Shown here in pieces: positions 1,185 to 52,457 of a DNA stretch of 64,000 nucleotides. Within the stretch, counting starts at the first letter, position 1, and the number at the start of each line of letters is the position of its first letter. Below the pieces are notes generated by a model, which was not told where the DNA came from, made no database searches, and saw only the letters and a list, made by a program, of their open reading frames with translations. Position numbers and translations under genes: made by a program. This DNA comes from Ranitomeya imitator (taxonomy: Eukaryota): positions 7,192,001 through 7,256,000 of the forward strand of contig NC_091291.1 of the NCBI RefSeq assembly GCF_032444005.1, in the 5' to 3' direction.

Positions 1185-1381
1185 CACTATGCATGCAACG
1201 TTTTTTTGTCCATCGGTTCCGCTTTTTCCGGAACTCCGCCCCCTCCTCCCCGGACCTTACAATGGGGCAGCGGATGCGTTGTAAAACTGCATCCGCTGCC
1301 CCCGTTGTGATTTTATTTCACAGTATACGTCGGCCCGACGCACTGCGATGGGCCCGTACCGACGCTAGTGCGAAAGTAGCC
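1185..1381. mobile_element. Truncated PIF/Harbinger-type MITE, same family as 1760-2158
   Basis: Right TIR ...GCTAGTGCGAAAGTAGCC followed by TTA. Internal text (CCGGAACTCCGCCCC...GGGGGCAGCGGATGCG) is shared with 2006-2060. No left TIR found. Confidence 0.6.
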
Positions 1382-4302: not shown

Positions 4303-4663
4303 GGTTTCTTTTACACTTGCCGTGTTTTTGCGGCCCGTTTTTGTGGCGCCAATACATTTCTATGGGGCTGCAAAAATTCATCGGAGCGCCGAACTCCGTA
4401 TGTACACGTGTGAAAAAAAATATAGAGCCTGCTCGATATTTTTCACTGCTTACGGACACGGCCACAACGGAAGCTTGTTTTTGCGGTGCACCGTGAATAC
4501 CGTTTTTGTGGAACGTTTTTTTTTTTTGTTTCAATACTTTTCCCTAGTATTCGAAACCAGAAAAAACAGCGATCCGCAAGATTTTTGCGGCCTGTTTTTG
4601 CAGGAGACCGTGAAAATTGCGGCAAAACGGCCCGCAAAAATCACGGCTAGTGTAAAAGAAGCC
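4303..4663. mobile_element. PIF/Harbinger-type MITE
   Basis: TIRs GGTTTCTTTTACACTTGCCGTG and CACGGCTAGTGTAAAAGAAGCC. Flanks are TTC and TTA (one mismatch). Confidence 0.75.
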
Positions 4664-4786: not shown

Positions 4787-5878
4787 AGGCCATGTTCACA
4801 CAGTGCGTTTTTTACCGCGGAACCGCGGCGGTTTTGCCGCTGCGGTTCCGCAGCTGTTTTCCATGCAGGGTACAGTACACTGTACCCTATGGAAAACAGG
4901 ACACACTGTGCACATGGTCCGGAAATTGTAAAAAAAAAGCCGCGCTGAATAGCTCCCGGAAAAAAGAAGGAGCATGTCAATTCTTCTTCCTGAACCGCAG
5001 CGGTTCTGCACCCATAGACCTCCATTGTGAGGTCAAAATCGCAGTAAAACACGCAGATCAAAAATATATCTGCGGGTTTTACTGCGATTTGATGTGCAGA
5101 ACCGCTGCAGCAGGAAGTGCGGGGGAGCGGGCGGAAGTGCGTGGGCGGAGTGTGGCTGCCCCCCCGTGCTCCGATCCCGCCCCCCCGTGCTCCGATGCCC
5201 CCCCCCCCCGTGCTCCGATGCCCCCCCCCCAGTGCTCCGATGCCCCCCCCGTGCCCTAATCTCCCCCCCTTATACTTACCCGGCGTCCCGGTGTCCGTCC
5301 GGCCGTCTTCTCCCTGGGCGCCGCCATCTTGCAAAATGGCGGGCGCATGCGCAGTGCGCCCGCCGAATCTGCCGGCCGGCAGATTCGCTCCAAAGTGCAT
5401 TTTGATCACTGAGATATAACCTATCTCAGTGATCAAAATAAAAAAATAGTAAATGACCCCCCCCCACTTTGTCACCCCCATTGNNNNNNNNNNNNNNNNN
5501 NNNNNNNNNNNNNNNNNNNNNNNNNNNNNNNNNNNNNNNNNNNNNNNNNNNNNNNNNNNNNNNNNNNNNNNNNNNNNNNNNNNNNNNNNNNNNNNNNNNN
5601 NNNNNNNNNNNNNNNNNNNNNNNNNNNNNNNNNNNNNNNNNNNNNNNNNNNNNNNNNNTTAGCCCTAAAAAGCTTCCTAGGAAACACAGTCTCTGCATAG
5701 AAAACTGCATAAAAAAAGGATAAAAAAACGCATCAAAAAACGCATCAAAAAACGCATCAAAAAAGGACAAAAAAAGGACCAAAAAAAGGACCTGCGTTTT
5801 CTGCCAAGAGCTGCAGTTTTTTAAAAAAACTGTCCTGAAAAAAAAAGGATGGAAATCCTGAACGTGTGAACATACCCT
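4787..5878. mobile_element. Composite non-autonomous DNA transposon sequence (Harbinger-like ends) spanning an assembly gap
   Basis: Left TAA-GGCCATGTTCACAC, right GTGTGAACATACCC-TAA, and a GC-rich palindromic interior. It may be two different elements joined across the N gap. Confidence 0.5.
5484..5658. other. Assembly gap (175 N)
   Basis: Run of N directly visible. Confidence 0.99.
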
Positions 5879-9641: not shown

Positions 9642-12600
9642 GTGTGGGGGAGGGGGGTGGGGAGGGAAGTTAGACAGCTCAGAACGGGGAGTAAAGACAT
9701 AACTAAAGATGATGAGTCACATAATAGGGGACGCTTTAAGATATTGAGTTGGAATGTGAGATGTCTGGCGGATAAGTCTAGGAGAGCTGCGAGTTTGCAG
9801 TATGCGAAGGATCAACGGGCCTCTATGATATGTTTGCTAGAGACGCACTTAATACGGGAGAAGGTGGACGTACTGAATAGACGATGGATTCAGAAGGGGT
9901 ATCATTCTACCTTTTCGACGTACTCAAGGGGTGTGTCAGTGTTGGTGCCGGTGGGAGTGCAGTATGAAGAGGTGAAGGTATGCGTGGATGCAGAGGGTCA
10001 GTATGTGGTGATACAATGTATATTGTATGGAGTGAGAGTGTGTGTGGCGGCAATGTATATTCCACCTCCATATTCAAGTAAGAAGATCAGGGAGGTGTTG
10101 GAGAAGGTGGAACGATGGGGACCACTTTTAATTATTGGGGATTTGAACAATATTTGTGACGACTTTTGGGATAAAAATAAGAACACCCAGAACAGGTCGG
10201 AGGGGCACACTACAACATTTGGTACCTATGTGCGTGAAATAGGTATGATTGATCTATGGAGAGTTAGACATGTTGGGGAGAGAGGGTACTCGTGCTACTT
10301 GCCGGCTCATGCTACGCTATCCAGAATTGATATGGCGCTGGGTAACCGCCTGTTAGACACAATGGTGGGGGAGGTGCGTTATTTGCCGAGGGCCCTTTCG
10401 GACCACAGTCCAATTGAGGTGGAGGTCAGGTTGTTGGGGACACGGACCGCAAGCGGGAGAGAATGGAAGATCCATCCTAACTGGTTACAGAGCATTGACT
10501 TGGAGGGTATAGGGAAGGAGGTGACGGAATTATTTGCCTTAAATGATGGGAGTACAGATGCTCTAACTGTTTGGGATGCAATGAAAGCGTACCTGAGAGG
10601 GTTACTATTTAGAGACATTAGTAGGTGTAAGCGGAAGACAAGGGAAGCGGAGAGAGTGGCGGTGGAGGAGCTGAAGGCTGCAGAGGACGAGATGGTAGTG
10701 TTGGGGACCTCCGAGGCAGGGAAAAGGTTGAGAAAAGCGCAAACTCATATGGAGAAGATTCTGCTGGGAAAAGCTGAAAGGAAGCGGGAGTTTCAAAGGG
10801 TGACTTATTTTCAGGAGGGAGAAACAGTGGGCCACATGCTATCGGTGGTGGCTTCTGCTCAGCGTAGTACCTCGTATGTACATTCGTTGGTTTCGGATGG
10901 GGGGAGCAGGATATCTGAAACACCTGGAATTATAAAGGTCTTTGCGGACTTTTACACGGACTTATATTCCTCCAGGGTCAATGAGTCAGCCGGAGATACG
11001 GAAACTTTCCTGGAGAGTCTGGGTCTTCCGAAATTGAGTGAGGAGGATAGGGTGAGCCTCGATGCCCCTATCACCGAGGAGGAACTGAGTCGAGCGCTGA
11101 AGTCTATGGCCAATGGGAAGGCACCTGGGGTTGATGGGTTACCAGCCGAAATCTATAAAAGTTTGGGGGAGGTGTTGATTCCCAGATTAAAGCTAGTACT
11201 GGAGGAGGCTGGATGCCGGGGGTATCTCCCAGCATCTATGAGGGAAGCCATTATAGTGGTTATTCCGAAGGAAGACAAGGATCTGGGGAAACCTGAGTCA
11301 TATCGCCCAATCTCTCTGTTAACCATCGATGTCAAGCTACATTCGGATCAGTCCGGCTTTATGCCTGACAGGTCTACAGCGGTTAATCTGCGGAGGCTGT
11401 ATATGGATCTGCAGCTGAAGTCTGACAATTGTGGCCGGAGGGGGGTTGCGTCTTTGGATGCACATAAGGCGTTCGATAGTGTGGAGTGGGGATATCTCTG
11501 GCAGGTGTTGAAGTGTATGGGTATTGGACCACAATTTGTGTCATGGATTCAATTACATAGTAACATATAGTAACATAGTTAGTAAGGCCGAAAAAAGACA
11601 TTTGTCCATCCAGTTCAGCCTATATTCCATCATAATAAATACCCAGATCTACGTCCTTCTACAGAACCTAATAATTGTATGATACAATATTGTTCTGCTC
11701 CAGGAAGACATCCAGGCCTCTCTTGAACCCCTCGACTGAGTTCGCCATCACCACCTCCTCAGGCAAGCAATTCCAGATTCTCACTGCCCTAACAGTAAAG
11801 AATCCTCTTCTATGTTGGTGGAAAAACCTTCTCTCCTCCAGACGCAAAGAATGCCCCCTTGTGCCCGTCACCTTCCTTGGTATAAACAGATCCTCAGCGA
11901 GATATTTGTATTGTCCCCTTATATACTTATACATGGTTATTAGATCGCCCCTCAGTCGTCTTTTTTCTAGACTAAATAATCCTAATTTCGCTAATCTATC
12001 TGGGTATTGTAGTTCTCCCATCCCCTTTATTAATTTTGTTGCCCTCCTTTGTACTCTCTCTAGTTCCATTATATCCTTCCTGAGCACCGGTGCCCAAAAC
12101 TGGACACAGTACTCCATGTGCGGTCTAACTAGGGATTTGTACAGAGGCAGTATAATGCTCTCATCATGTGTATCCAGACCTCTTTTAATGCACCCCATGA
12201 TCCTGTTTGCCTTGGCAGCTGCTGCCTGGCACTGGCTGCTCCAGGTAAGTTTATCATTAACTAGGATCCCCAAGTCCTTCTCCCTGTCAGATTTACCCAG
12301 TGGTTTCCCGTTCAGTGTGTAATGGTGATATTGATTCCCTCTTCCCATGTGTATAACCTTACATTTATCATTGTTAAACCTCATCTGCCACCTTTCAGCC
12401 CAAGTTTCCAACTTATCCAGATCCATCTGTAGCAGAATACTATCTTCTCTTGTATTAACTGCTTTACATAGTTTTGTATCATCTGCAAATATGCTATATT
12501 CATTACCGACAGCTAAAATCAGAGTGAATGGGGAACTTTCTCAGCCTATAAAGTTGGCCAGAGGTACGAGGCAGGGGTGCCCACTGTCGCCCCTTGTTTG

Positions 12601-22122: not shown

Positions 22123-22271
22123 CGTGTCTGTCAAATGGAACGTCATCCTCCACAAAGGGCTCAAAGTCATGGCGATGCTTCACCATGTAATCGGCGGTCT
22201 CCTGTCGGTGCCGCAGGTGATTCCGGGAATGTCCCTCCAGCTGATCCCCCAGAGCGTGGAACAAGCAATTA
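22123..22271 (-). CDS. OTUD3: OTUD3 exon 2 (catalytic Cys)
   Basis: (G)[49 protein letters not shown]; AG/GT. Confidence 0.96.
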
Positions 22272-22769
22272 CTGTGAAGACACGAGGGAAATATAAAGCC
22301 AAAAGACAGGGATGGACGAGCCGAGGCTGAGGACGAGGACTTGTCAGCCATGTTCTAGGCTTCCCATGGTGGCTCACGGCAGGGTCTACACCTGCGGCTC
22401 TGGGGCCGTCTGGGAGGAGACAGAGGTCGAAGAGGAGTCTGGTTGGTCCTTAATTGGTCCTCCAGCTGGGACTCACATTAGCACTTATGGCTTTTTAATT
22501 GTTTTCACATGTGCATTTTTTGTCTAGCGTATTTATTTGTATCATAATAAATGTACTAATATTTAGAACAGAGATCCTTGCTTTGTATACGCACTTTTTT
22601 CCTTTTTTTCTGATCTGCTGGTAATTATAGCACAGACCCTGCATAGGGACATCACCACAGTGTTGCGCCGTAGAGACACTGAGAATCACAGCTGTAAAAT
22701 ATCGTGATAGAACATCAGCTGTGAGAACAACCTCCGTCTGCTGCCAGACGGCCCGAGAGCCGCAGGTGT

Positions 22770-25700
22770 GTATGGAGGTGCGGACAGTGCAGGGCTCAGG
22801 CTCTAGGTGTAGGTGTTGCAGAATAGGAGCAGTATGGAGGTGCGGACAGTGCAGGGCTCGGGCTCTAGGTGTAGATGCTGTAGTACAGGAGCAGTATGGA
22901 GGTGCGGACAGTGCAGGGCTCAGGATCTAGGTGTAGGTGCTGCAGTATAGGAGCAGTATGGAGGTGCGGACAGTGTAGGGCTCGGGCTCTAGGTGTAGGT
23001 GCTGCAGTATAGGAGCAGTATGGAGGTGCGGACAGTGTAGGGCTCGGGCTCTAGGTGTAGGTGCTGCAGTATAGGAGCAGTATGGAGGTGAGGACAGTGC
23101 AGGGCTCAGGCTCTAGGTGTAGATGCTGCAGTATAGGAGCAGTATGGAGGTGAGGACAGTGCAGGGCTCAGGCTCTAGGTGTAGGTGCTGCAGTATAGGA
23201 GCAGTATGGAGGTGCGGACAGTGCAGGGCTCAGGCTCTAGGTGTAGGTGCTGCAGTATAGGAGCAGTATGGAGGTGCAGACAGTGCAGGGCTCAGGCTCT
23301 AGGTGTAGATGCTGCAGTATAGGAGCAGTATGGAGGTGAAGACAGTGCAGGGCTCAGGCTCTAGGTGTAGGTGCTGCAGTATAGGAGCAGTATGGAGGTG
23401 CAGACAGTGCAGGGCTCAGGCTCTAGGTATAGATGCTGCAGTATAGGAGCAGTATGGAGGTGCGGACAGTGCAGGGCTCAGGCTCTAGGTGTAGATGCTG
23501 CAGTATAGGAGCAGTATGGAGGTGCGGACAGTGCAGGGCTCAGGCTCTAGGTGTAGATGCTGCAGTATAGGAGCAGTATGGAGGTGCAGACAGTGCAGGG
23601 CTCAGGCTCTAGGTGTAGATGCTGCAGTATAGGAGCAGTATGGAGGTGCGGACAGTGCAGGGCTCAGGCTCTAGGTGTAGATGCTGCAGTATAGGAGCAG
23701 TATGGAGGTGCAGACAGTGCAGGGCTCAGGCTCTAGGTGTAGGTGCTGCAGAATAGGAGCAGTATGGAGGTGCGGACAGTGCAGGGCTCAGGCTCTAGGT
23801 GTAGGTGCTGCAGTATAGGAGCAGTATGGAGGTGCGGACAGTGCAGGGCTCAGGCTCTAGGTGTAGGTGCTGCAGAATAGGAGCAGTATGGAGGTGCGGA
23901 CAGTGCAGGGCTCAGGCTCTAGGTGTAGGTGCTGCAGTATAGGAGCAGTATGGAGGTGCGGACAGTGTAGGGTTCAGGCTCTAGGTGTAGATGCTGCAGT
24001 ATAGGAGCAGTATGGAAGTGCAGACAGTGCAGGGCTCAGGCTCTAGGTGTAGGTGCTGCAGTATAGGAGCAGTATGGAGGTGAGGACAGTGTAGGGTTCA
24101 GGCTCTAGGTGTAGATGCTGCAGTATAGGAGCAGTATGGAAGTGCAGACAGTGCAGGGCTCAGGCTCTAGGTGTAGATGCTGCAGTATAGGAGCAGTATG
24201 GAGGTGAGGACAGTGCAGGGCTCAGGCTCTAGGTGTAGATGCTGCAGTATAGGAGCAGTATGGAGGTGCAGACAGTGCAGGGCTCAGGCTCTAGGTGTAG
24301 ATGCTGCAGTATAGGAGCAGTATGGAGGTGCAGACAGTGCAGGGCTCAGGCTCTAGGTGTAGATGCTGCAGTATAGGAGCAGTATGGAGGTGCAGACAGT
24401 GCAGGGCTCAGGCTCTAGGTGTAGGTGCTGCAGTATAGGAGCAGTATGGAAGTGCAGACAGTGCAGGGCTCAGGCTCTAGGTGTAGGTGCTGCAGTATAG
24501 GAGCAGTATGGAGGTGCGGACAGTGTAGGGTTCAGGCTCTAGGTGTAGGTGCTGCAGTATAGGAGCAGTATGGAGGTGCGGACAGTGTAGGGTTCAGGCT
24601 CTAGGTGTAGATGCTGCAGTATAGGAGCAGTATGGAAGTGCAGACAGTGCAGGGCTCAGGCTCTAGGTGTAGGTGCTGCAGTATAGGAGCAGTATGGAGG
24701 TGAGGACAGTGTAGGGTTCAGGCTCTAGGTGTAGATGCTGCAGTATAGGAGCAGTATGGAAGTGCAGACAGTGCAGGGCTCAGGCTCTAGGTGTAGGTGC
24801 TGCAGTATAGGAGCAGTATGGAGGTGCGGACAGTGTAGGGTTCAGGCTCTAGGTGTAGATGCTGCAGTATAGGAGCAGTATGGAAGTGCAGACAGTGCAG
24901 GGCTCAGGCTCTAGGTGTAGGTGCTGCAGTATAGGAGCAGTATGGAGGTGCGGACAGTGTAGGGTTCAGGCTCTAGGTGTAGGTGCTGCAGTATAGGAGC
25001 AGTATGGAGGTGCGGACAGTGTAGGGTTCAGGCTCTAGGTGTAGATGCTGCAGTATAGGAGCAGTATGGAGGTGCGGACAGTGTAGGGTTCAGGCTCTAG
25101 GTGTAGGTGCTGCAGTATAGGAGCAGTATGGAGGTGCGGACAGTGTAGGGTTCAGGCTCTAGGTGTAGATGCTGCAGTATAGGAGCAGTATGGAAGTGCA
25201 GACAGTGCAGGGCTCAGGCTCTAGGTGTAGGTGCTGCAGTATAGGAGCAGTATGGAGGTGCGGACAGTGTAGGGTTCAGGCTCTAGGTGTAGGTGCTGCA
25301 GTATAGGAGCAGTATGGAGGTGCGGACAGTGTAGGGTTCAGGCTCTAGGTGTAGGTGCTGCAGTATAGGAGCAGTATGGAGGTGCGGACAGTGTAGGGTT
25401 CAGGCTCTAGGTGTAGATGCTGCAGTATAGGAGCAGTATGGAAGTGCAGACAGTGCAGGGCTCAGGCTCTAGGTGTAGGTGCTGCAGTATAGGAGCAGTA
25501 TGGAGGTGCGGACAGTGCAGGGCTCAGGCTCTAGGTGTAGATGCTGCAGTATAGGAGCAGTATGGAGGTGCGGACAGTGTAGGGTTCAGGCTCTAGGTGT
25601 AGATGCTGCAGTATAGGAGCAGTATGGAGGTGCGGACAGTGTAGGGTTCAGGCTCTAGGTGTAGATGCTGCAGTATAGGAGCAGTATGGAGGTGCGGACA

Positions 25701-26029
25701 GTGTAGGGTTCAGGCTCTAGGTGTAGATGCTGCAGTATAGGAGCAGTATGGAGGTGCAGACAGTGCAGGGTTCAGGCTCTAGGTGTAGGTGCTGCAGTAT
25801 AGGAGCAGTATGGAGGTGCAGACAGTGCAGGGCTCAGGCTCTAGGTGTAGATGCTGCAGTATAGGAGCAGTATGGAAGTGCAGACAGTGCAGGGCTCAGG
25901 CTCTAGGTGTAGATGCTGCAGTATAGGAGCAGTATGGAGGTGAGGACAGTGCAGGGCTCAGGCTCTAGGTGTAGGTGCTGCAGTATAGGAGCAGTATGGA
26001 GGTGCGGACAGTGTAGGGTTCAGGCTCTA
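22770..26029. repeat. 62-bp tandem array, about 52 copies, in OTUD3 intron 1
   Basis: Unit GTATGGAGGTGCGGACAGTGCAGGGCTCAGGCTCTAGGTGTAGGTGCTGCAGTATAGGAGCA. Confidence 0.98.
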
Positions 26030-26127
26030 TGAATCCTGTGCCTATGAGAGCACCAATATGGCGGCTCCTGCTTCAGGTACTGCTGTGACTGTGGAGCACT
26101 AATATGTCGCCTCAGCTCGCTCCTCAC

Positions 26128-26330
26128 CCGTCTCCCGGAACCTCTCGCAGGCGCAGCCCCAGGACTTGCAGCTGGTTGGCGAAGCTCAGGAATTCCTCCG
26201 GGTCTCCGGACTCTCCGCTCCGGTTCCGCCGCTCTTTAGCCAGAGCTCTCCGCGCTGCTCGTTCATCCCTCTTCCGCTCCAGTTCCGCCTTGTTCCCCGG
26301 CCGGGAACGGACATTCTGCTTCCTGGACAT
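26128..26330 (-). CDS. OTUD3: OTUD3 exon 1
   Basis: [37 protein letters not shown]...[19 protein letters not shown]; GTGAG donor. The 8 exons sum to 1185 nt (394 aa + stop). Confidence 0.97.
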
Positions 26331-26396
26331 GACAACAGCGGGCAGAGCTCCGAGACCGGCGGCCGCAACAGCTGCGGAGATACTTCCGGCATTCAC

Positions 26397-26410
26397 AGAG
26401 CACGTGACCA
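26397..26410 (-). promoter_or_regulatory. E-box GTCACGTG (USF/TFE-type) in the OTUD3 proximal promoter or 5'UTR
   Basis: GGTCACGTGCTC about 70 nt upstream of the ATG in CpG-rich sequence. Motif match only. Confidence 0.45.
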
Positions 26411-26558
26411 AAAGAGAGACCATAGAGAGGCAAGCGCTAAGCCAGACACGCCCGCACTGCCGCTCTACCCGGACCAGAGTCCTCCAGCCATAGAAATACA
26501 AGTAACACTAGATGGTGGCCCGAATCTAACGCATCGGGTATTCTAGAATATGCATGTC

Positions 26559-29500
26559 CACGTAGTATATTGCCCAGCCACGTAGTATACTGCCCAGCCA
26601 CGTAGTATATTGCCCAGCCACGTAGTATACTGCCCAGCCACGTAGTATATTGCCCAGTCACGTAGTATATTGCCCAGTCACGTAGTATATTGCCCAGCCA
26701 CGTAGTATACTGCCCAGCCACGTAGTATATTGCCCAGCCACGTAGTATACTGCCCAGCCACGTAGTATATTGCCCAGTCACGTAGTATATTGCCCAGTCA
26801 CGTAGTATATTGCCCAGCCACGTAGTATATTGCCCAGCCACGTAGTATATTGCCCAGCCACGTAGTATATTGCCCAGCCACGTAGTATATTGCCCAGTCA
26901 CATAGTATATTGCCCAACCACGTAGTATACTGCCCAGCCACGTAGTATATTGCCCAGTCACATAGTATATTGCCCAACCACGTAGTATACTGCCCAGCCA
27001 CGTAGTATATTGCCCAACCACGTAGTATACTGCCCAGCCACGTAGTATATTGCCCAGTCACATAGTATATTGCCCAGCCACGTAGTATACTGCCCAGCCA
27101 CGTAGTATACTGCCCAGCCACGTAGTATACTGCCCAGCCACGTAGTATACTGCCCAGCCACGTAGTATACTGCCCAGCCACGTAGTATACTGCCCAGCCA
27201 CGTAGTATATTGCCCAGTCACGTAGTATATTGCCCAGTCACGTAGTATATTGCCCAGCCACGTAGTATATTGCCCAGCCACGTAGTATATTGCCCAGCCA
27301 CGTAGTATATTGCCCAGCCACGTAGTATATTGCCCAGTCACATAGTATATTGCCCAACCACGTAGTATACTGCCCAGCCACGTAGTATATTGCCCAGTCA
27401 CATAGTATATTGCCCAGCCACGTAGTATACTGCCCAGCCACGTAGTATACTGCCCAGCCACGTAGTATACTGCCCAGCCACGTAGTATACTGCCCAGCCA
27501 CGTAGTATATTACCCAGTCACGTAGTATATTGCCCAGCCACGTAGTATATTGCCCAGTCACGTAGTATATTGCCCAGCCACGTAGTATATTGCCCAGTCA
27601 CGTAGTATATTGCCCAGCCACGTAGTATATTGCCCAGTCACGTAGTATATTGCCCAGCCACGTAGTATATTGCCCAGTCACGTAGTATATTGCCCAGTCA
27701 CGTAGTATATTGCCCAGCCACGTACTATATTGCCCAGCCACGTAGTATATTGCCCAGTCACGTAGTATATTGCCCAGTCACGTATTATATTGCCCAGCCA
27801 CGTAGTATATTGCCCAGCCACGTAGTATATTGCCCAGCCACGTAGTATATTGCCCAGCCACGTACTATATTGCCCAGCCACGTAGTATATTGCCCAGTCA
27901 CGTAGTATATTGCCCAGTCACGTATTATATTGCCCAGCCACGTAGTATATTGCCCAGCCACGTACTATATTGCCCAGCCACGTAGTATATTGCCCAGTCA
28001 CGTAGTATATTGCCCAGTCACGTATTATATTGCCCAGCCACGTAGTATATTGCCCAGCCACGTAGTATATTGCCCAGCCACGTAGTATATTGCCCAGCCA
28101 CGTACTATATTGCCCAGCCACGTAGTATATTGCCCAGTCACGTAGTATATTGCCCAGTCACGTATTATATTGCCCAGCCACGTAGTATATTGCCCAGCCA
28201 CGTACTATATTGCCCAGCCACGTAGTATATTGCCCAGCCACGTAGTATATTGCCCAGTCACGTAGTATATTGCCCAGCCACGTAGTATATTGCCCAGCCA
28301 AGTAGTATATTGCCCAGTCACGTAGTATATTGCCCAGTCACGTATTATATTGCCCAGCCACGTAGTATATTGCCCAGCCACGTAGTATATTGCCCAGTCA
28401 CGTAGTATATTGCCCAGCCACGTACTATATTGCCCAGCCACGTAGTATATTGCCCAGTCACGTAGTATATTGCCCAGTCACGTATTATATTGCCCAGCCA
28501 CGTAGTATATTGCCCAGCCACGTAGTATATTGCCCAGCCACGTAGTATATTGCCCAGCCACGTAGTATATTGCCCAGTCACGTAGTATATTGCCCAGCCA
28601 CGTAGTATATTGCCCAGCCACGTAGTATATTGCCCAGCCACGTAGTATATTGCCCAGCCACGTAGTATATTGCCCAGCCACGTAGTATATTGCCCAGTCA
28701 CGTAGTATATTGCCCAGCCACGTAGTATATTGCCCAGCCACGTAGTATATTGCCCAGCCACGTAGTATATTGCCCAGCCACGTAGTATATTGCCCAGCCA
28801 CGTAGTATATTGCCCAGCCACGTAGTATATTGCCCAGTCACGTAGTATATTGCCCAGTCACGTATTATATTGCCCAGCCACGTAGTATATTGCCCAGCCA
28901 CGTAGTATATTGCCCAGTCACGTAGTATATTGCCCAGCCACGTACTATATTGCCCAGCCACGTAGTATATTGCCCAGCCACGTAGTATATTGCCCAGCCA
29001 CGTAGTATATTGCCCAGCCACATATTATATTGCCCAGCCACGTAGTATATTGCCCAGCCACGTAGTATATTGCCCAGCCACGTAGTATATTGCCCAGTCA
29101 CGTAGTATATTGCCCAGTCACGTATTATATTGCCCAGCCACGTAGTATATTGCCCAGCCACGTAGTATATTGCCCAGTCACGTAGTATATTGCCCAGCCA
29201 CGTACTATATTGCCCAGCCACGTAGTATATTGCCCAGCCACGTAGTATATTGCCCAGCCACGTAGTATATTGCCCAGCCACGTAGTATATTGCCCAGCCA
29301 CGTAGTATATTGCCCAGCCACGTAGTATATTGCCCAGTCACGTAGTATATTGCCCAGTCACGTATTATATTGCCCAGCCACGTAGTATATTGCCCAGCCA
29401 CGTAGTATATTGCCCAGCCACGTAGTATATTGCCCAGCCACGTAGTATATTGCCCAGCCACGTAGTATATTGCCCAGCCACGTAGTATATTGCCCAGTCA

Positions 29501-29804
29501 CGTAGTATATTGCCCAGCCACGTAGTATATTGCCCAGTCACGTAGTATATTGCCCAGTCACGTATTATATTGCCCAGCCACGTAGTATATTGCCCAGTCA
29601 CGTATTATATTGCCCAGCCACGTAGTATATTGCCCAGTCACGTAGTATATTGCCCAGCCACGTAGTATATTGCCCAGCCACGTAGTATATTGCCCAGCCA
29701 CGTAGTATATTGCCCAGTCACGTAGTATATTGCCCAGCCACGTAGTATATTGCCCAGCCACGTAGTATATTGCCCAGCCACGTAGTATATTGCCCAGTCA
29801 CGTA
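26559..29804. repeat. 20-bp tandem array, about 160 copies, inside the Helitron
   Basis: Unit CACGTAGTATATTGCCCAG(C/T), in strict 20-bp phase. Confidence 0.99.
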
Positions 29805-30012
29805 TGTCACAGGTTACAAAAAATAAAAATAAACATATACTCACCTTCCGAGGGCCACTTCTAGTTCGATCACATGACCCTGACGTCATGGCAGGTCCTT
29901 CTCCCATACCACCGGAACCTGCCGCTTGCATGGAGTGGTCACCGGAGTGAAGGTGATTATATGATGATTTTTAATTTTTTAAATTATTTTTAACATTAAA
30001 TGTTTTTAATCC

Positions 30013-31298
30013 CTCCTGTCAAACCAATCTAATCAGTTTTTATGAAGAGGTAAGCTATAGGCTGGACCACGGTGAGTCATTGGACGTGGTATATCTCGAT
30101 TTTTCCAAAGCGTTTGATACCGTGCCGCACAAAAGGTTGGTGCACAAAATGAGAATGCTTGGTCTGGGGGAACATGTGTGTAAATGGGTTAGTAACTGGC
30201 TTAGTGATAGAAAGCAGAGGGTGGTTATAAATGGTATAGTCTCTAACTGGGTCGCTGTGACCAGTGGGGTACCGCAGGGGTCAGTATTGGGACCTGTTCT
30301 CTTCAACATATTCATTAATGATCTGGTAGAAGGTTTACACAGTAAAATATCGATATTTGCAGATGATACAAAACTATGTAAAGCAGTTAATACAAGAGAA
30401 GATAGTATTCTGCTACAGATGGATCTGGATAAGTTGGAAACTTGGGCTGAAAGGTGGCAGATGAGGTTTAACAATGATAAATGTAAGGTTATACACATGG
30501 GAAGAGGGAATCAATATCACCATTACACACTGAACGGGAAACCACTGGGTAAATCTGACAGGGAGAAGGACTTGGGGATCCTAGTTAATGATAAACTTAC
30601 CTGGAGCAGCCAGTGCCAGGCAGCAGCTGCCAAGGCAAACAGGATCATGGGGTGCATTAAAAGAGGTCTGGATACACATGATGAGAGCATTATACTGCCT
30701 CTGTACAAATCCCTAGTTAGACCGCACATGGAGTACTGTGTCCAGTTCTGGGCACCGGTGCTCAGGAAGGATATAATGGAACTAGAGAGAGTACAAAGGA
30801 GGGCAACAAAATTAATAAAGGGGATGGGAGAACTACAATACCCAGATAGATTAGCGAAATTAGGATTATTTAGTCTAGAAAAAAGACGACTGAGGGGCGA
30901 TCTAATAACCATGTATAAGTATATAAGGGGACAATACAAATATCTCGCTGAGCATCTGTTTATACCAAGGAAGGTGACGGGCACAAGGGGGCATTCTTTG
31001 CGTCTGGAGGAGAGAAGGTTTTTCCACCAACATAGAAGAGGATTCTTTACTGTTAGGGCAGTGAGAATCTGGAATTGCTTGCCTGAGGAGGTGGTGATGG
31101 CGAACTCAGTCGAGGGGTTCAAGAGAGGCCTGGATGTCTTCCTGGAGCAGAACAATATTGTATCATACAATTATTAGGTTCTGTAGAAGGACGTAGATCT
31201 GGGTATTTATTATGATGGAATATAGGCTGAACTGGATGGACAAATGGCTTTTTTCGGCCTTACTAACTATGTTACTATGTTACTATGTATGTTACTAT
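30013..31298 (+). mobile_element. 5'-truncated CR1 LINE inserted in the Helitron
   Basis: Open RT C-terminal frame 30080-31177 (YLDFSKAFDTVPH, GVPQGSVLGP, FADDTKL), then 3'UTR and (GTTACTAT)n tail. Confidence 0.95.
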
Positions 31299-31745
31299 TG
31301 ACGCTGCATAGGCAGCATCAATAGAAAAATCTTGGTCACACAGGGTTAAGCATCAATAGAAAAATCTTGGTCACACAGGGTTAATAGCAGCAGTAATGGA
31401 GTGAGTTACCCGCGGCATAACGCGGTCCGTTACCGCTGACATTAACCCTGTGTGAGCGGTGACCAGAGGGGAGTATGGAGCAGGAGCTTTGTACTGACTG
31501 CAGGGCAGTAGGGAGGGACTAATCGGACTGTGGCCTTCGCTGATTGGTCGTAGCAGCCATGACAGGCAACTGGCGAGACCAATCAGCGAATGAATAACCG
31601 TGACAGAAGGACAGACAGACGGAAGTGACCCTTAGACAATTATATAGTAGATGGGAGATAAAGAGCTCAGAACTCACCACCTGCAGCCAGAACACTGGAG
31701 GAAACCGTCAGCAAGCATGGAGACAGTCACTGAGCCACACTAGTA

Positions 31746-33797
31746 GAACAGTGAGTGCAGCTATGGGGTATAATACAGGATGTAACTCAGGATTAGTAAT
31801 GTAATGTATGTACACAGTGACTGCACCAGCAGAATAGTGAGTGCAGCTCTGGAGTATAATACAGGAGGTAACTCAGGATCAGTAATGTATGTACACAGTG
31901 ACTGCACCAGCAGAATAGTGAGTGCAGCTCTGGAGTATAATACAGGATGTATCTCAGGATCAGTAATGTAATGTATGTACACAGTGACTGCACCAGCAGA
32001 ATAGTGAGTGCAGCTCTGGGGTATAATACAGGATGTAACTCAGGATCAGTAATGTAATGTATGTACACAGTGACTGCACCAGCAGAATAGTGAGTGCAGC
32101 TCTGGAGTATAATACAGGAGGTAACTCAGGATCAGTAATGTATGTACACAGTGACTGCACCAGCAGAATAGTGAGTGCAGCTCTGGAGTATAATACAGGA
32201 TGTATCTCAGGATCAGTAATGTAATGTATGTACACAGTGACTGCACCAGCAGAATAGTGAGTGCAGCTCTGGGGTATAATACAGGATGTAACTCAGGATT
32301 AGTAATGTAATGTATGTACACAGTGACTGCACCAGCAGAATAGTGAGTGCAGCTCTGGAGTATAATACAGGATGTAACTCAGGATTAGTAATGTAATGTA
32401 TGTACACAGTGACTGCACCAGCAGAATAGTGAGTGCAGCTCTGGAGTATAATACAGGAGGTAACTCAGGATCAGTAATGTATGTACACAGTGACTGCACC
32501 AGCAGAATAGTGAGTGCAGCTCTGGAGTATAATACAGGATGTATCTCAGGATCAGTAATGTAATGTATGTACACAGTGACTGCACCAGCAGAATAGTGAG
32601 TGCAGCTCTGGGGTATAATACAGGATGTAACTCAGGATCAGTAATGTAATGTATGTACACAGTGACTGCACCAGCAGAATAGTGAGTGCAGCTCTGGAGT
32701 ATAATACAGGAGGTAACTCAGGATCAGTAATGTATGTACACAGTGACTGCACCAGCAGAATAGTGAGTGCAGCTCTGGAGTATAATACAGGATGTATCTC
32801 AGGATCAGTAATGTAATGTATGTACACAGTGACTGCACCAGCAGAATAGTGAGTGCAGCTCTGGGGTATAATACAGGATGTAACTCAGCATCAGTAATGT
32901 AATGTATGTACACAGTGACTGCACCAGCAGAATAGTGAGTGCAGCTCTGGAGTATAATACAGGAGGTAACTCAGGATCAGTAATGTATGTACACAGTGAC
33001 TCCACCAGCAGAATAGTGAGTGCAGCTCTGGGGGATAATACAGGATGTAACTCAGGATCAGTAATGTATGTACACAGTGACTGCACCAGCAGAATAGTGA
33101 GTGCAGCTCTGGGGTATAATACAGGATGTAACTCAGGATCAGTAATGTAATGTATGTACACAGTGACTGCACCAGCAGAATAGTGAGTGCAGCTCTGGGG
33201 GATAATACAGGAGGTAACTCAGGATCAGTAATGTATGTACACAGTGACTGCACCAGCAGAATAGTGAGTGCAGCTCTGGGGTATAATACAGGATGTAACT
33301 CAGGATCAGTAATGTAATGTATGTACACAGTGACTGCACCAGCAGAATAGTGAGTGCAGCTCTGGAGTATAATACAGGATGTAACTCAGGATCAGTAATG
33401 TAATGTATGTACACAGTGACTGCACCAGCAGAATAGTGAGTGCAGCTCTGGGGTATAATACAGGATGTAACTCAGGATCAGTAATGTAATGTATGTACAC
33501 AGTGACTGCACCAGCAGAATAGTGAGTGCAGCTCTGGGGTATAATACAGGATGTAACTCAGGATCAGTAATGTAATGTATGTACACAGTGACTGCACCAG
33601 CAGAATAGTGAGTGCAGCTCTGGGGTATAATACAGGAGGTAACTCAGGATCAGTAATGTAATGTATGTACACAGTGACTGCACCAGCAGAATAGTGAGTG
33701 CAGCTCTGGAGAATAATACAGGAGGTAACTCAGGATCAGTAATGTAATGTATGTATACAGTGACTGCACCAGCAGAATAGTGAGCACAGCTCTGGAG
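31746..33797. repeat. 86/81-bp tandem array, about 24 copies, with a 253-bp higher-order repeat
   Basis: Unit ...ACAGTGACTGCACCAGCAGAATAGTGAGTGCAGCTCTGGAGTATAATACAGGATGTAACTCAGGATCAGTAATGTAATGTATGTAC. The ORF track repeats every 253 bp. Confidence 0.97.
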
Positions 33798-34787
33798 GGT
33801 AATAGAGTATTTTTCCGTACTCGGGATTAGATTTGTGTCTGAGTGTGTCGGTGTCGGGACAATGATTGCAGTAGGCGGCTCCCGCTGTTTCCTTGTCATT
33901 CAGAGGAGACATCAGACTTTTGTGCAGTAATGCTATTTTCTTCCTAGATGGCAGTGTTGTCCACATTGGGGAAATAAAGGAGACAGTGACCCTGCGGAGC
34001 AGCGCTCCTCTACACGCCCTGAACTCCTGACTGATACATTGTAACGCCAGGAGCTGTGAGCAGTATGAGGTTTGTGCAGGTTGTAAGCTGCGGTCATGTA
34101 CCATGAATGAGCGGTGTGACATGGACATCCCCTTTAATTAGCAGTCACACCATTAATCTGGGGTCATGTAATAAGCTATAATTGACACTCGCTGGTGTTA
34201 ACCCCTCGGGCTGCGCACCTTCTGTGACTTAGAAAATGAATTATGTTGCATCGTCTCCGCTGCTGCCGTGACTGAGGATGCGGAGGACTCGTGTCTGCGG
34301 AGCTTCCTCCTGCTGCTCCCCCTGCTGTGCTCCTCGCTGCCCCCCATCTTGGTCTTCAGGCGACATAATGTCACCACTGCCCCTAAACGTGATCCCCATA
34401 GACCCTGCCCCTGAATAATGGGGCCAATATACGATCGGGCTGGAGTCCTCGGTGGTCAGTGTGTAGTAGAGCAGAGCTGCAGGGTAAAGCAGGGAGATCC
34501 CGGATGGGGCAGATCTTACATTAGTTATGGTCTGGAGTCGCTGATCGACGCTGCGCATTAATGGAGCTGAGGATGATTAACGGCAGGTGATGGTGGTATA
34601 ATATTGGGGGCTCGGATCCTCAGCAGGGCGGTGACACGTTGGGGGTCCGGGGTGGAGCGGGCGAGGTCCTGGGCTGCACATTGCTCCTCACTATTAATAA
34701 TAAGGGACTTTGCTCCTCATTTATTGCTCTGTTTTCCTATTAATATTTTGCTTTCTCAGCAGTCAGAGTCGTGTTAATATCGGAGCT

Positions 34788-36612
34788 CACCGCCCGTCAC
34801 GTGTCACACGGGGGTCCAGCAAACATCACGTGGGGGTCTCTTACCACCACACATCACACGGGGGGCCTCCGACCACCACACATCACACGTGGGGGTCTCT
34901 TACCACCATACATCACACGGGGGGCCTCCGACCACCACACATCACACGGGGGGCCTCCGACCACCACACATCACACGGGGGGCCTCCGACCACCAAACAT
35001 CACACGGGGAGCCTCCGACCACCAAACATCACACGGGGGGCCTCCGACCACCAAACATCACACGGGGAGCCTCCGACCACCACACATCACACTGGGGGCC
35101 TCCGACCACCAAACATCACACGGGGAGCCTCCGACCACCAAACATCACACGGGGGGCCTCCGACCACCACACATCACACGGGGAGCCTCCGACCACCACA
35201 CATCACACGGGGGGCCTCCGACCACCAAACATCACACGGGGGGCCTCCGACCACCACACATCACACGGGGAGCCTCCGACCACCACACATCACACGGGGG
35301 CCTCCGACCACCAAACATCACACGGGGGGCCTCCGACCACCACACATCACACGGGGGGGCCTCCGACCACCACACATCACACGGGGAGCCTCCGACCACC
35401 ACACATCACACGGGGAGCCTCCGACCACCACACATCACACGGGGGGCCTCCGACCACCAAACATCACACGGGGAGCCTCCGACCACCAAACATCACACGG
35501 GGGGCCTCCGACCACCACACATCACACGGGGGGCCTCCGACCACCACACATCACACGGGGGGCCTCCGACCACCAAACATCACACGGGGGCCTCCGACCA
35601 CCAAACATCACACGGGGGGCCTCCGACCACCAAACATCACACGGGGGCCTCCGACCACCAAACATCACACGGGGGGCCTCCGACCACCACACATCACACG
35701 GGGGGGCCTCCGACCACCACACATCACACGGGGAGCCTCCGACCACCACACATCACACGGGGAGCCTCCGACCACCACACATCACACGGGGGGCCTCCGA
35801 CCACCAAACATCACACGGGGGGCCTCCGAATACCAAACATCACACGGGGAGCCTCCGACCACCACACATCACACGGGGGGCCTCCGACCACCACACATCA
35901 CACGGGGAGCCTCCGACCACCAAACATCACACGGGGGGCCTCCGAATACCAAACATCACACGGGGAGCCTCCGACCACCACACATCACACGGGGAGCCTC
36001 CGACCACCAAACATCACACGGGGGGCCTCCGACCACCAAACATCACACGGGGAGCCTCCGACCACCACACATCACACGGGGAGCCTCCGACCACCAAACA
36101 TCACACGGGGGGCCTCCGACCACCACACATCACACGGGGAGCCTCCGACCACCACACATCACACGGGGGGCCTCCGACCACCAAACATCACACGGGGGCC
36201 TCCGACCACCAAACATCACACGGGGAGCCTCCGACCACCAAACATCACACGGGGGGCCTCCGACCACCACACATCACACGGGGGGGCCTCCGACCACCAC
36301 ACATCACACGGGGAGCCTCCAACCACCACACATCACACGGGGGACCTCCGACCACCAAACATCACACGGGGAGCCTCCGACCACCAAACATCACACGGGG
36401 GGCCTCCGACCACCACACATCACACGGGGGACCTCCGACCACCAAACATCACATGGGGGGGGGGGCTCCGACCACCACACATCACACAGGAGGCCTCCGA
36501 CCACCACACATCACACGGGGGGCCTCCGACCACCACACATCACATGGGGGGGCCTCCGACCACCACACATCACATGGGGGGGCCTCCGACCACCGCCCGT
36601 CACGTGTCACAC
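34788..36612. repeat. About 29-bp G-run minisatellite, about 60 copies
   Basis: Unit ATCACACGGGGGGCCTCCGACCACCA(C/A)AC with variable G-run length, bounded by a 22-bp direct repeat. Confidence 0.97.
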
Positions 36613-37698
36613 AGGGTGGTTTGCTGGTTGCCCCCATCTGGCCGGTAGCCGTGCAGAGGCATGTACGCCTCTATGGTGAATCCTATAGGGGGCTCTGACA
36701 TAATGGCGGTCGGGTGGAGTAGCTGCTGCCCCCTGGGCTGTGTGACCATCTTGTACTTTGTGCGGCCGCAGTCGCTCTGCATGGAGCGCATGAACCCGTC
36801 TAATCTCAGGGCGAGACCTTCATCTTATCATGGTGTGGAGATTTAGAGGGGCGTCACCGAGGGCTCCTCCATCCAGCTGGGGTCTCCCTTAGTGTGCCCC
36901 CCCAATACTGCAGGGCTCAGCAGGGGGCGACACTGAGCCTAGGAGAACGCTGCCAGTTGTATGGCGAGGGATGGAAACAAAAGGACTAATAGTGAAGGGT
37001 CGGTAGTGGAGAATTCAGGGATGACCCCGCTCAGGCGCTGGGGATATCGGGGGGGTCTGGAGTTGCCCTATAAGTCCCATGTTGCAGGAGTTGCCGCAGC
37101 CGTGCAGCCCCCATCACCCGTCCTGTGCCCTCCTTACTGTTCAGCCATGACAGCATTGCCCAGCGCCATGTCCTCACTTTAGGTCGCAGGTAACGCAGCG
37201 TTTTTTAGCGCCATTTTCAGAAATTATAGCAAAACGCCTCAAGCTCCAGAACTGCATCATGCAACCGTGCGGATAATATCGTTGCCAGGAGATGGTGGGG
37301 GCGCGTTGAAGAGAGGAGCCCCAATTCCTGGAGCAAAAATGGGCAATTGGGGCCCCCAGCCTCTAGGACAGGAGCTCTACTAATAATCGCATGCAGACAT
37401 TGAGTGCGGGCGCCGGGGAATTGCCCAGGTGTCGGACCCCTAACGCCGGCCATGCTATTGAGCCGCTTGGCCCGCTATGATTTGTACCCGCTGTCTCGGT
37501 GCATGGCTGCCGATGTGTAGGACATGAGGGGTCTCACTGAATCCATTCCTGGCTGCCGTGGAGGGTGGCGGAGGCTTCACCATCACCCATAAAACCTATT
37601 GAGCGGCGGGTTAATGTGTAAGCGCCGGGGCTGATAAGGGCCGCTCGCTGCACCGCTGCCTGAGTTCCCCACAGGGACAGCTGAGACACGGACCCGGC

Positions 37699-51368: not shown

Positions 51369-52457
51369 ACATTACTGATCCTGAGCTACCTCCTGTATTA
51401 TACTCCAGAGCTGCACTCACTATTCTGCTGGTGCAGTCACTGAGTACATACGTTACATTACTGATCCTGAGTTACCTCCTGTATTATACTCCAGAGCTGC
51501 ACTCACTATTCTGCTGGTGCAGTCACTGTGTACATACATTACATTACTGATCCTGAGTTACCTCCTGTATTATACTCCAGAGCTGCACTCACTATTCTGC
51601 TGGTGCAGTCACTGTGTACATACATTACATTACTGATCCTGAGTTACATCCTGTATTATACCCCAGAGCTGCACTCACTATTCTGCTGGTGCAGTCACTG
51701 TGTACATACATTACATTACTGATCCTGAGTTACCTCCTGTATTATACTCCAGAGCTGCACTCACTATTCTGCTGGTGCAGTCACTGTGTACATACATTAC
51801 ATTACTGATCCTGAGTTACCTCCTGTATTATACTCCAGAGCTGCACTCACTATTCTGCTGGTGCAGTCACTGTGTACATACATTACATTACTGATCCTGA
51901 GTTACCTCCTGTATTATACTCCAGAGCTGCACTCACTATTCTGCTGGTGCAGTCACTGTGTACATACATTACATTACTGATCCTGAGTTACATCCTGTAT
52001 TATACTCCAGAGCTGCACTCACTATTCTGCTGGTGCAGTCACTGTGTACATACATTACATTACTGATCCTGAGTTACATCCTGTATTATACCCCAGAGCT
52101 GCACTCACTATTCTGCTGGTGCAGTCACTGTTTACATACATTACATTACTGATCCTGAGTTACCTCCTGTATTATACTCCAGAGCTGCACTCACTATTCT
52201 GCTGGTGCAGTCACTGTGTACATACATTACATTACTGATCCTGAGTTACATCCTGTATTATACTCCAGAGCTGCACTCACTATTCTGCTGGTGCAGTCAC
52301 TGTGTACATACATTACATTACTGATCCTGAGTTACATCCTGTATTATACCCCAGAGCTGCACTCACTATTCTGCTGGTGCAGTCACTGTGTACATACATT
52401 ACATTACTGATCCTGAGTTACCTCCTGTATTATACCCCAGAGCTGCACTCACTGTTC
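51369..52457. repeat. 86-bp tandem array, about 13 copies; reverse complement of the 31746-33797 family
   Basis: Unit ...ATTACTGATCCTGAGTTACCTCCTGTATTATACTCCAGAGCTGCACTCACTATTCTGCTGGTGCAGTCACTGT... Confidence 0.97.

What the first reader, a model, noticed from the sequence alone, without database searches (positions are those of the whole stretch)
26508..31651. Helitron with an expanded internal satellite sits in the OTUD3 proximal promoter
Seen: all Helitron hallmarks (A|TC start, subterminal hairpin, CTAG|T end, no TSD). The core is only about 0.6 kb once a 3.2-kb 20-mer array and a 1.3-kb CR1 are subtracted. Its 3' end is 178 bp upstream of the OTUD3 ATG, on the same strand. Established: Helitrons transpose by rolling-circle replication, and some seed satellites. 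Inference: any original OTUD3 upstream elements have been pushed 5.1 kb away, leaving the gene with a minimal promoter or a TE-derived one.
Basis: partly seen in the sequence, partly recalled or inferred. Interest (0 to 1): 0.75.

Follow-up and report, generated by a model that had tools for sequence, protein, structure and literature searches.

The report
Satellite-filled Helitron beside OTUD3 promoter
A non-coding rolling-circle transposon (Helitron), swollen by a 3.2-kb 20-bp repeat and a later CR1 insertion, sits about 100 bases upstream of where a poison frog's OTUD3 gene starts transcription; the gene still starts in its own DNA, so this is an ordinary insertion of a known kind.

Summary
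A 5,144-bp element lies on the minus strand. Its 5' end is at 31651 (A|TCTACTATATAA). A 5-bp GC hairpin sits 11 nt before its CTAG|T end at 26508, and there is no target duplication. It contains 162 in-register copies of a 20-mer (26558-29804) and a 5'-truncated CR1 (about 30003-31298). It ends 178 bp from the minus-strand OTUD3 ATG at 26330.

Public contigs settle the 3' end. In a DNA run, depth is single-copy up to 26497. About 6,500 contigs then pile onto 26505-26557. Hundreds diverge exactly before 26507 into unrelated AT-rich flanks.

The 5' end could not be tested on other copies and rests on motif resemblance only (chance about 0.1).

Spliced OTUD3 mRNA contigs from three studies begin at 26402-26411, and one runs straight into a sequencing adapter. 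The TSS is therefore in non-transposon DNA, 97-106 bp from the Helitron. This supports "minimal promoter" and does not support "TE-derived promoter".

"Displaced upstream elements" is untestable here. Beyond the Helitron lie only about 86 bp of unique DNA and then another 2-kb array.

The element also carries a promoter/first-exon-like module, like bat HelibatN3.

This scan had already followed up satellite-carrying Helitrons elsewhere in this genome. This is a new member of a known kind.

The parts
26508..31651 (-). Whole putative non-autonomous Helitron, 5,144 bp, with its 5' end at 31651 and 3' end at 26508
   Evidence: Junction sequences. The 3' boundary is proven by other copies. The 5' boundary is inferred from the A|TC + TATATAA motif.
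26508..26552 (-). Right terminal sequence (RTS), 45 bp shared by the family, ending CTAG
   Evidence: In DNA run X1, depth rises from 12.6 to summed millions here and 6,544 contigs are laid. Loose ends fall exactly before 26507 in 316 contigs with no consensus. On the inner side, copies diverge at 26551/26552/26556.
26519..26538 (-). Subterminal hairpin CCCGA-(10 nt)-TCGGG, 11 nt from the 3' end
   Evidence: Sequence and centroid fold. The spacing equals that of Helraiser.
26558..29804 (.). 20-bp tandem array, 162 units, consensus CCACGTAGTATATTGCCCAG
   Evidence: TRF. Perfect register, 11 variants, 3% from consensus, block-duplication patterns, CpG o/e 0.86.
29805..30002 (-). Inner Helitron segment holding a promoter/first-exon-like module. 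It has a TGACGTCA palindrome (29881-29888), an ATG at 29931, a 29-codon ORF, a GAAG|GTGAGT donor after 29845, and 31-nt inverted arms.
   Evidence: Its first 22 aa are 95% identical to the start of an annotated Ranitomeya imitator protein.
30003..31298 (+). Nested, 5'-truncated CR1-type LINE fragment in the opposite orientation
   Evidence: RVT_1 at E 2.6e-25. A 99.3%-identical second copy lies at 11554-12500 on the minus strand.
31299..31651 (-). Helitron 5' part. It starts with the left terminus TCTACTATATAATTG and holds two inverted CCAAT boxes (31536-49 / 31577-90), a 38-nt-arm hairpin and a 35-bp x2 repeat.
26412..26507 (-). Non-TE proximal promoter of OTUD3 (96-105 bp), with an AT-rich outer 20 bp where the Helitron landed
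   Evidence: Zero RNA depth here. GC 0.55 overall, but GC 0.30 over 26488-26507.
26128..26411 (-). OTUD3 exon 1, with 5' ends at 26402/26404/26411, the ATG at 26330 and the donor after 26128
   Evidence: Spliced RNA contigs from X2, X4 and X7, and adapter directly after 26402. PDB 4BOU match. Small CpG island, GC 0.64 and o/e 0.95.
22272..26127 (-). OTUD3 intron 1, 85% of it a 62-bp x 52.6 array (22770-26029). Exon 2 begins at 22271.
   Evidence: exon 2 matches 4BOU residues 26-74 at E 1.2e-25.
31652..31737 (.). Flank on the 5' side of the Helitron: 86 bp, grading into a 2.07-kb 86-mer array (31738-33804)
   Evidence: No other copy in the window.

Best explanation
This is a non-autonomous canonical Helitron from a very abundant poison-frog family. 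It inserted, in the same orientation as the gene, into an A|T dinucleotide in an AT-rich patch at the upstream edge of the small OTUD3 CpG-island promoter.

Shown:
- The 3' terminus is the exact boundary of a family with thousands of copies.
- The insertion is present in a second DNA haplotype.
- OTUD3 is transcribed and spliced from a start at about 26402-26411, 97-106 bp downstream of the element, in non-TE DNA.

Inferred:
- The 5' end is at 31651.
- The element arrived carrying a captured promoter/first-exon-like fragment and a short proto-repeat next to its 3' terminus.
- That repeat grew in place, by slippage or unequal exchange of multi-unit blocks, to 162 units.
- A young CR1 then landed inside the element.
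- OTUD3 runs on a compact core promoter (E-box at the start site, ETS and GC boxes) and is probably little affected.
For: - **3' boundary.** Single-copy depth of 12.6 runs up to 26497, then 6,544 DNA contigs pile on 26505-26557. Of the contigs with loose ends there, 316 break before 26507, against 40, 29 and 21 at 26506, 26505 and 26503. So most copies share the T after CTAG, and their flanks are AT-rich with no consensus.
- **Second haplotype.** X1 contig 1 spans 26030-26534 and differs by G>A at 26345 and a 3-bp deletion at 26371. The junction therefore exists in another haplotype.
- **Transcription start.** RNA contigs of 1739, 1707 and 539 nt from three studies lie on 26128-26402/26411/26404 with no differences. 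They are spliced to the exon 2 sequence at 22242-22271. X2 continues into AGATCGGAAGAGC right after 26402.
- **Terminal sequences.**
- **Literature match.** TC/CTAG ends, a palindrome 11 nt from the end, an AT target with AT-rich 3' flanks, and 6.9-fold and 7.3-fold preferences for CpG islands and active promoters. Frog Heli1Xen1 has TC, TATATAAA, a CCCG... hairpin and CTAG.
- **Array.** 162 units in register, 3% divergence, block patterns.
- **CR1.**
- **Same genome.** Other scan notes report real satellite-carrying Helitrons in this genome.
Against: - The 5' boundary was never seen in another copy. An a-priori 5' motif (A|TC within 10 nt of TATATAA) is expected about twice per window by chance. 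That gives roughly 0.1 for one on the right strand within 6 kb.
- No empty site was obtained.
- No second copy of either terminus is in the window.
- Generic hairpin + CTRR sites are not enriched, and the hairpin is thermodynamically weak.
- Contigs cannot exclude rare transcripts that start in the element.
- Arrays cover 39% of the window, so the array may owe nothing to the Helitron.
Confidence: 0.72

Rival explanations
1. Composite locus. A genuine Helitron 3' terminus with its array (26508 to about 30000) is truncated or has its true 5' end elsewhere. The CR1 and the 353 bp at 31299-31651 are unrelated older DNA, and A|TC at 31651 is a coincidence.
For: The 5' end has no support from other copies. 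The motif has a chance of about 0.1. Most family copies diverge from this one just inside the 45-bp terminus, so the interiors are heterogeneous.
Against: TCTACTATATAA preceded by A matches the canonical left end described for frog and bat families. CCAAT boxes in 31536-31590, followed after removal of the CR1 by an ATG exon and donor about 330 bp downstream, read as one captured promoter/first-exon unit spanning both sides of the CR1. No alternative TC terminus is evident near 30000.
Confidence: 0.2
2. The Helitron supplies OTUD3 with a promoter or alternative first exon. Transcripts would start at the CCAAT/CRE module and splice from the donor after 29845 into OTUD3, or read through the array.
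For: The module is co-oriented with OTUD3 and has an ATG and a consensus donor. The same 22-aa start is used in an annotated R. imitator gene model. HelibatN3 does exactly this in bats.
Against: RNA contigs from three studies start at 26402-26411 and none covers 26426-26497. Splicing the module exon to OTUD3 exon 2 gives an immediate TAA stop. A CR1 now interrupts the module. RNA over the module itself could not be examined.
Confidence: 0.05
3. Not a transposon at all: an ordinary minisatellite in a minisatellite-rich region, with chance Helitron-like motifs at its edges.
For: 39% of the window is tandem arrays. Generic hallmarks are not above chance.
Against: The 45 bp ending in CTAG occur in thousands of different contexts, with a sharp boundary exactly at CTAG|T.
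Confidence: 0.02

Closest known systems
Helibat1 / Helraiser and its non-autonomous HelibatN3 subfamily (vespertilionid bats; PMC4778049)
   Same: 5'-TC and CTAG-3' ends, a palindrome 11 nt before the 3' end, an A|T target with AT-rich 3' flanks and no duplication. It prefers CpG islands and promoters of expressed genes. Its cargo consists of a promoter, a few N-terminal codons and a splice donor. Insertions lie within 1 kb upstream of annotated start sites.
   Different: Different host and unrelated sequence. Here the cargo's parent gene is unknown, the cargo is interrupted by a CR1, and no transcript from it was seen. HelibatN3 is not described there as carrying a kilobase-scale minisatellite.
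Heli1Xen1 family of Xenopus and other vertebrates (PMC12001565)
   Same: An anuran canonical Helitron with TC, a TA-rich TATATAA(A) motif at the left end, a CCCG...CGGG-type hairpin and CTAG at the right end. Its non-autonomous copies capture gene fragments.
   Different: The tandem arrays reported there have monomers of 121-1,996 nt with 2-7 copies, not a 20-mer x 162.
Cg_HINE non-autonomous Helentrons of the Pacific oyster (PMC7492417)
   Same: Non-coding rolling-circle elements whose centre is a satellite-like tandem array, dispersing arrays through the genome.
   Different: Those belong to the Helentron superfamily, which has different termini, and the arrays are a family trait. Here most family copies diverge just inside the terminus, so the long array may be private to this copy or a subfamily.

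Membership tests
Canonical Helitron (non-autonomous) | 3' end CTRR (CTAG) that is the exact shared boundary of a multi-copy family | tested here: met
   thousands of contigs share 26508-26552, and 316 break exactly before 26507.
Canonical Helitron (non-autonomous) | Subterminal GC-rich hairpin about 10-12 nt before the 3' end | tested here: met
   CCCGA/TCGGG with a 10-nt loop, 11 nt from the end. The fold energy is no better than shuffles (z -0.31).
Canonical Helitron (non-autonomous) | Insertion between A and T without target-site duplication | tested here: met
   Flanks are ...AACA|...|TGGG on the plus strand. Most other copies also carry T after CTAG. The 7-bp CCATCTA shared by the 5' junction and the 3' end is element sequence on one side, not a duplication.
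Canonical Helitron (non-autonomous) | 5' end TC, shared by other copies | tested here: inconclusive
   TC preceded by A and followed by TATATAA is present. No other copy could be retrieved, and the motif has a chance of about 0.1.
Canonical Helitron (non-autonomous) | Empty site in an allele or a related species | not testable with these tools
   No frog genome DNA was retrievable. The only DNA contig across the site carries the insertion.
Canonical Helitron (non-autonomous) | Autonomous Rep/helicase partner with matching ends in the genome | not tested
   None is in the window, and no genome-wide search was available.
CR1-type LINE (nested insert) | Reverse-transcriptase domain, 5' truncation, short-repeat 3' tail | tested here: met
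   RVT_1 at E 2.6e-25 covering profile positions 58-194 only. The tail is TTACTATG-type repeats. A second copy is 99.3% identical.
TE-derived (Helitron-supplied) promoter of a host gene | Host-gene transcription start lies inside the element | tested here: not met
   mRNA contigs from three studies start at 26402-26411, outside the element.
Helitron-seeded satellite | The array monomer derives from family-internal sequence, and arrays recur in other copies | tested here: inconclusive
   A few contigs continue after 26556 with sequence about 70-80% like one 20-mer unit (agreement 0.6-0.7). Most copies diverge at 26551/2. The array was not found elsewhere.

The most novel reading that the evidence does not exclude
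The Helitron-borne CCAAT/CRE promoter module and the 162-copy array act on OTUD3. Each array unit carries a TACGTG core. They could work as an alternative upstream promoter producing non-coding or N-terminally altered transcripts, or as a length-variable regulatory array just upstream of the core promoter. In that case array length would tune expression of a deubiquitinase gene.
Probability: 0.05. Interest if true: 0.5.

Novelty: new member of a known kind. Interest (0 to 1): 0.2.

Why it matters
Little beyond annotation.
- It is a clean, coordinate-level example of a Helitron landing at the AT-rich edge of a CpG-island promoter, as Helraiser does experimentally.
- It is a natural deletion-style experiment. 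OTUD3 is still transcribed with at most about 105 bp of its own DNA upstream of the start site.
- It adds one more case to the picture, already noted by this scan, that this poison-frog genome is full of Helitrons carrying minisatellites.
- It warns annotators that a Helitron-borne first-exon module is being built into gene models, such as the R. imitator protein that starts with it.

Tried and rejected
- **Other copies in the window.** There are none.
- **Metagenome scan with the 5' 22-mer.** Two hits, both only 23-24-nt chance matches in AT-rich microbial contigs. I did not use them.
- **Protein-word searches with ORFs read from the element, hoping for other copies.**
  - The ORF across the 5' junction found nothing.
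  - An exact look-up of the exon 1 ORF is not on record.
- **Scan look-ups by sequence.** Blank for the 5' end, the 3' end, the array and the module.
- **Rfam.** No family anywhere in the window.
- **A 7-bp direct repeat TAGATGG (26509-15 and 31648-54) as a target duplication.** Rejected, because the left copy is part of the conserved family terminus.
- **The TTAACCCTGTGTGA inverted repeats as piggyBac-type ends.** They face outward and occur only here, so I left them as internal palindromes.
- **Reads over the array and the 5' end.** The reads tool turns away stretches with a long repeat, and only one call was allowed. I spent it on 26030-26557.
- **The big representative protein search.** Not run, since the protein (OTUD3) was not in doubt.
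- **Joined OTUD3 model.** Not built. Exons were searched separately by reference.
Full report
**What is there**

Read on the minus strand, the interval 26508-31651 begins ctccca|TCTACTATATAATTG. It ends ...CCCGATGCGTTAGATTCGGGCCACCATCTAG|tgttactt. The start is therefore A|TC and the end CTAG|T. The flanks (AAGTAACA and TGGGAG on the plus strand) share no duplication.

The stem CCCGA/TCGGG (26519-23 and 26534-38, 10-nt loop) ends 11 nt before the terminus.

The interior has four pieces:
- A 20-bp array at 26558-29804, with 162.4 copies and 95% matches.
- A 198-bp segment at 29805-30002.
- A plus-strand, 5'-truncated CR1 at about 30003-31298. It has an RVT_1 domain at E 2.6e-25. A 99.3%-identical copy lies at 11554-12500.
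- A 353-bp 5' part at 31299-31651.

**OTUD3**

The minus-strand ORF 26124-26501 contains [14 protein letters not shown]...REVPGDG, with its ATG at 26330.
- Exon 1 matches human OTUD3 structure 4BOU, residues 3-24.
- The next exon (22124-22270) matches residues 26-74 at E 1.2e-25 and carries the GNCLF catalytic motif.

So 26508 is 178 bp from the ATG and on the same strand as the gene.

**Is it more than chance?**

The hallmarks alone are not. A scan for any GC-rich hairpin 6-14 nt before CTRR|T finds 11 sites in the window, against 5-20 in shuffles. The hairpin folds no better than shuffles (z -0.31).

The decisive evidence is the one read-laying run (on 26030-26557, the only stretch beside the gene that is free of long repeats).
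- In DNA run X1 the depth is a flat 12.6 up to 26497.
- About 6,500 contigs then pile on 26505-26557, with summed depth in the millions.
- Of the contigs that run on into other DNA, 316 break exactly before 26507, against 40, 29 and 21 at 26506, 26505 and 26503.
- Their continuations have no consensus (agreement 0.40-0.45) and are AT-rich.

So the family boundary is exactly CTAG. Most copies are followed by T, and the targets are AT-rich. On the inner side the copies part from this one at 26551/26552/26556, so the shared terminus is about 45 bp.

This is what a high-copy canonical Helitron family looks like. It matches the experimentally defined properties of Helraiser: TC/CTAG ends, a palindrome 11 nt from the end, an AT target, and AT-rich DNA especially at the 3' flank.

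X1 also has a 532-nt contig spanning 26030-26534 that differs from the window by G>A at 26345 and a 3-bp deletion at 26371. The junction therefore exists in a second haplotype and is not an assembly artefact.

**The 5' end**

I could not verify it on other copies.
- There is none in the window.
- The metagenome hits are 23-24-nt chance matches.
- Protein-word searches and look-ups gave nothing usable.
- Scan look-ups by sequence were blank.

TCTACTATATAA preceded by A agrees with the left end described for the frog family Heli1Xen1 (TC plus a TATATAAA tract). However, an a-priori pattern (A|TC, then TATATAA within 10 nt) is expected about twice per window on both strands. That gives roughly 0.1 for one on the right strand within 6 kb.

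A second, softer argument comes from the two sides of the CR1, which read as one unit.
- Two inverted CCAAT boxes lie at 31536-49 and 31577-90.
- With the CR1 removed, about 330 bp downstream come a TGACGTCA palindrome, an ATG (29931), 29 codons and a GAAG|GTGAGT donor after 29845.

This resembles the promoter, few-codons and splice-donor cargo of HelibatN3. I put the single-element reading with its 5' end at 31651 at about 0.7. A composite locus is about 0.2.

**The array**

- All 162 units are in perfect register.
- There are only 11 variants, and the mean distance from the consensus is 3%.
- Runs of variants repeat as multi-unit blocks, and variants are confined to domains of the array.
- CpG is largely intact, with o/e 0.86 and 156 CpGs.

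That is the signature of recent local growth by slippage or unequal exchange. It is not the signature of rolling-circle concatenation, which would repeat whole elements.

A few contigs from other copies continue after 26556 with sequence roughly 70-80% like one unit (low agreement). This hints that the monomer is family-internal sequence. Most copies do not show it.

Tandem arrays of 20-127-bp units make up 39% of this window, in at least 16 unrelated families. The genome expands minisatellites everywhere, so the Helitron need not be the cause.

**Order of events (inferred)**

1. Helitron insertion.
2. Array growth.
3. Insertion of a CR1 from a still-young family.

**OTUD3 transcription**

Contigs from three studies (X2 1739 nt, X4 1707 nt, X7 539 nt) lie on 26128-26402, 26128-26411 and 26128-26404 without a single difference. 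They continue before 26128 with the sequence found at 22242-22271, so they are spliced mRNA.

The X2 contig runs directly from 26402 into the Illumina adapter. This indicates a recurrent fragment end, that is, an mRNA 5' end.
- The start site is therefore at about 26402-26411, on a GGTCACGTGC E-box. A CCGGAAGT ETS motif lies just downstream and a GGGCGTG box upstream.
- The 5' UTR is 72-81 nt.
- The Helitron ends 97-106 bp upstream of the start.
- No RNA contig covers 26426-26497.

The gene thus works with at most about 105 bp of its own upstream DNA. "Minimal promoter" is supported and "TE-derived promoter" is not.

Contigs show presence, not absence, so rare element-initiated transcripts are not excluded. 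A splice from the module's donor to OTUD3 exon 2 would meet an immediate TAA.

Whether anything functional was displaced is unknown. Beyond the element there are only 86 bp of unique DNA before a 2.07-kb 86-mer array. The landing site, an AT-rich 20 bp (GC 0.30) at the edge of a small CpG island (GC 0.64, o/e 0.95), fits the measured Helraiser preference for CpG islands and active promoters.

**Comparison and novelty**

Everything here has precedent:
- canonical vertebrate Helitrons with these termini;
- promoter/first-exon capture and insertions within 1 kb upstream of start sites;
- rolling-circle elements carrying satellite-like arrays.

This scan had already followed up satellite-filled Helitrons and a promoter-like Helitron cargo elsewhere in the same genome. 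I did not re-test those notes, but they agree with this case.

The host is a poison frog according to those notes. The only protein hit is from Ranitomeya imitator.

My verdict is a real, well-delimited (at its 3' end) member of a known kind, with low interest.

**Limits**
- The 5' end and the empty site are untested.
- All runs were contigs, so there is no copy number or expression level.
- The array and the module could not be examined with reads.
Exons were searched one by one.

Noticed in passing
window 1-64000 (arrays listed): About 39% of the window (25 kb) is minisatellite arrays of at least 16 unrelated families, with units of 20-127 bp. They lie in OTUD3 introns and in the OTUD3-TMCO4 intergenic DNA. 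Outside the arrays the only repeated family in the window is the CR1.
   Followed up: partly
window 31738-33804 (+) and 51369-52457 (-): The same 86-bp satellite occurs twice in opposite orientation, 17.5 kb apart. The flank of the first array that I compared (31652-31737) has no match elsewhere in the window, and no non-array stretch near either array pairs with another in the window's self-comparison.
   Followed up: partly
window 22272-26127: OTUD3 intron 1 is 85% occupied by a 62-bp x 52.6 array. Exon 1 is therefore a 0.5-kb island between two 3.2-kb arrays, yet it is spliced correctly in three RNA data sets.
   Followed up: yes
window 29845-29931 (-) and protein P0001: The Helitron-borne 29-codon ORF begins with 22 aa that are 95% identical to the start of an annotated Ranitomeya imitator partial protein (168 aa, Aa_trans). 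That protein's first roughly 50 residues hold the motif twice. This is either exonised Helitron modules or an annotation artefact.
   Followed up: partly
window 11554-12500 (-) and 30346-31289 (+): Two CR1 fragments are 99.3% identical over 947 bp, which implies a recently active CR1 family.
   Followed up: partly
window 1324-1368 (+) and 4606-4650 (+): Two further sites have a GC-rich hairpin followed by CTAG|TG. They might be 3' ends of other Helitron families, but the count of such sites is no higher than in shuffles.
   Followed up: no
window 26345 and 26371: DNA run X1 differs from the window in the OTUD3 5' UTR by G>A and a 3-bp deletion. The RNA contigs from three studies match the window.
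   Followed up: no
window 34710-36698 (+): ORFs of 596-662 codons arise purely from a 29-bp array (HHTSHGGPPTTT-type repeats). They are likely spurious and a trap for gene callers.
   Followed up: no
window 31336-31455: Three exact copies of TTAACCCTGTGTGA are arranged as outward-facing inverted repeats around a 38-nt-arm hairpin inside the Helitron 5' part. This is more than chance (expected 0.5) and its meaning is unknown.
   Followed up: partly
window 5484-5658: A run of 175 N (assembly gap or masked). I left it untouched.
   Followed up: no
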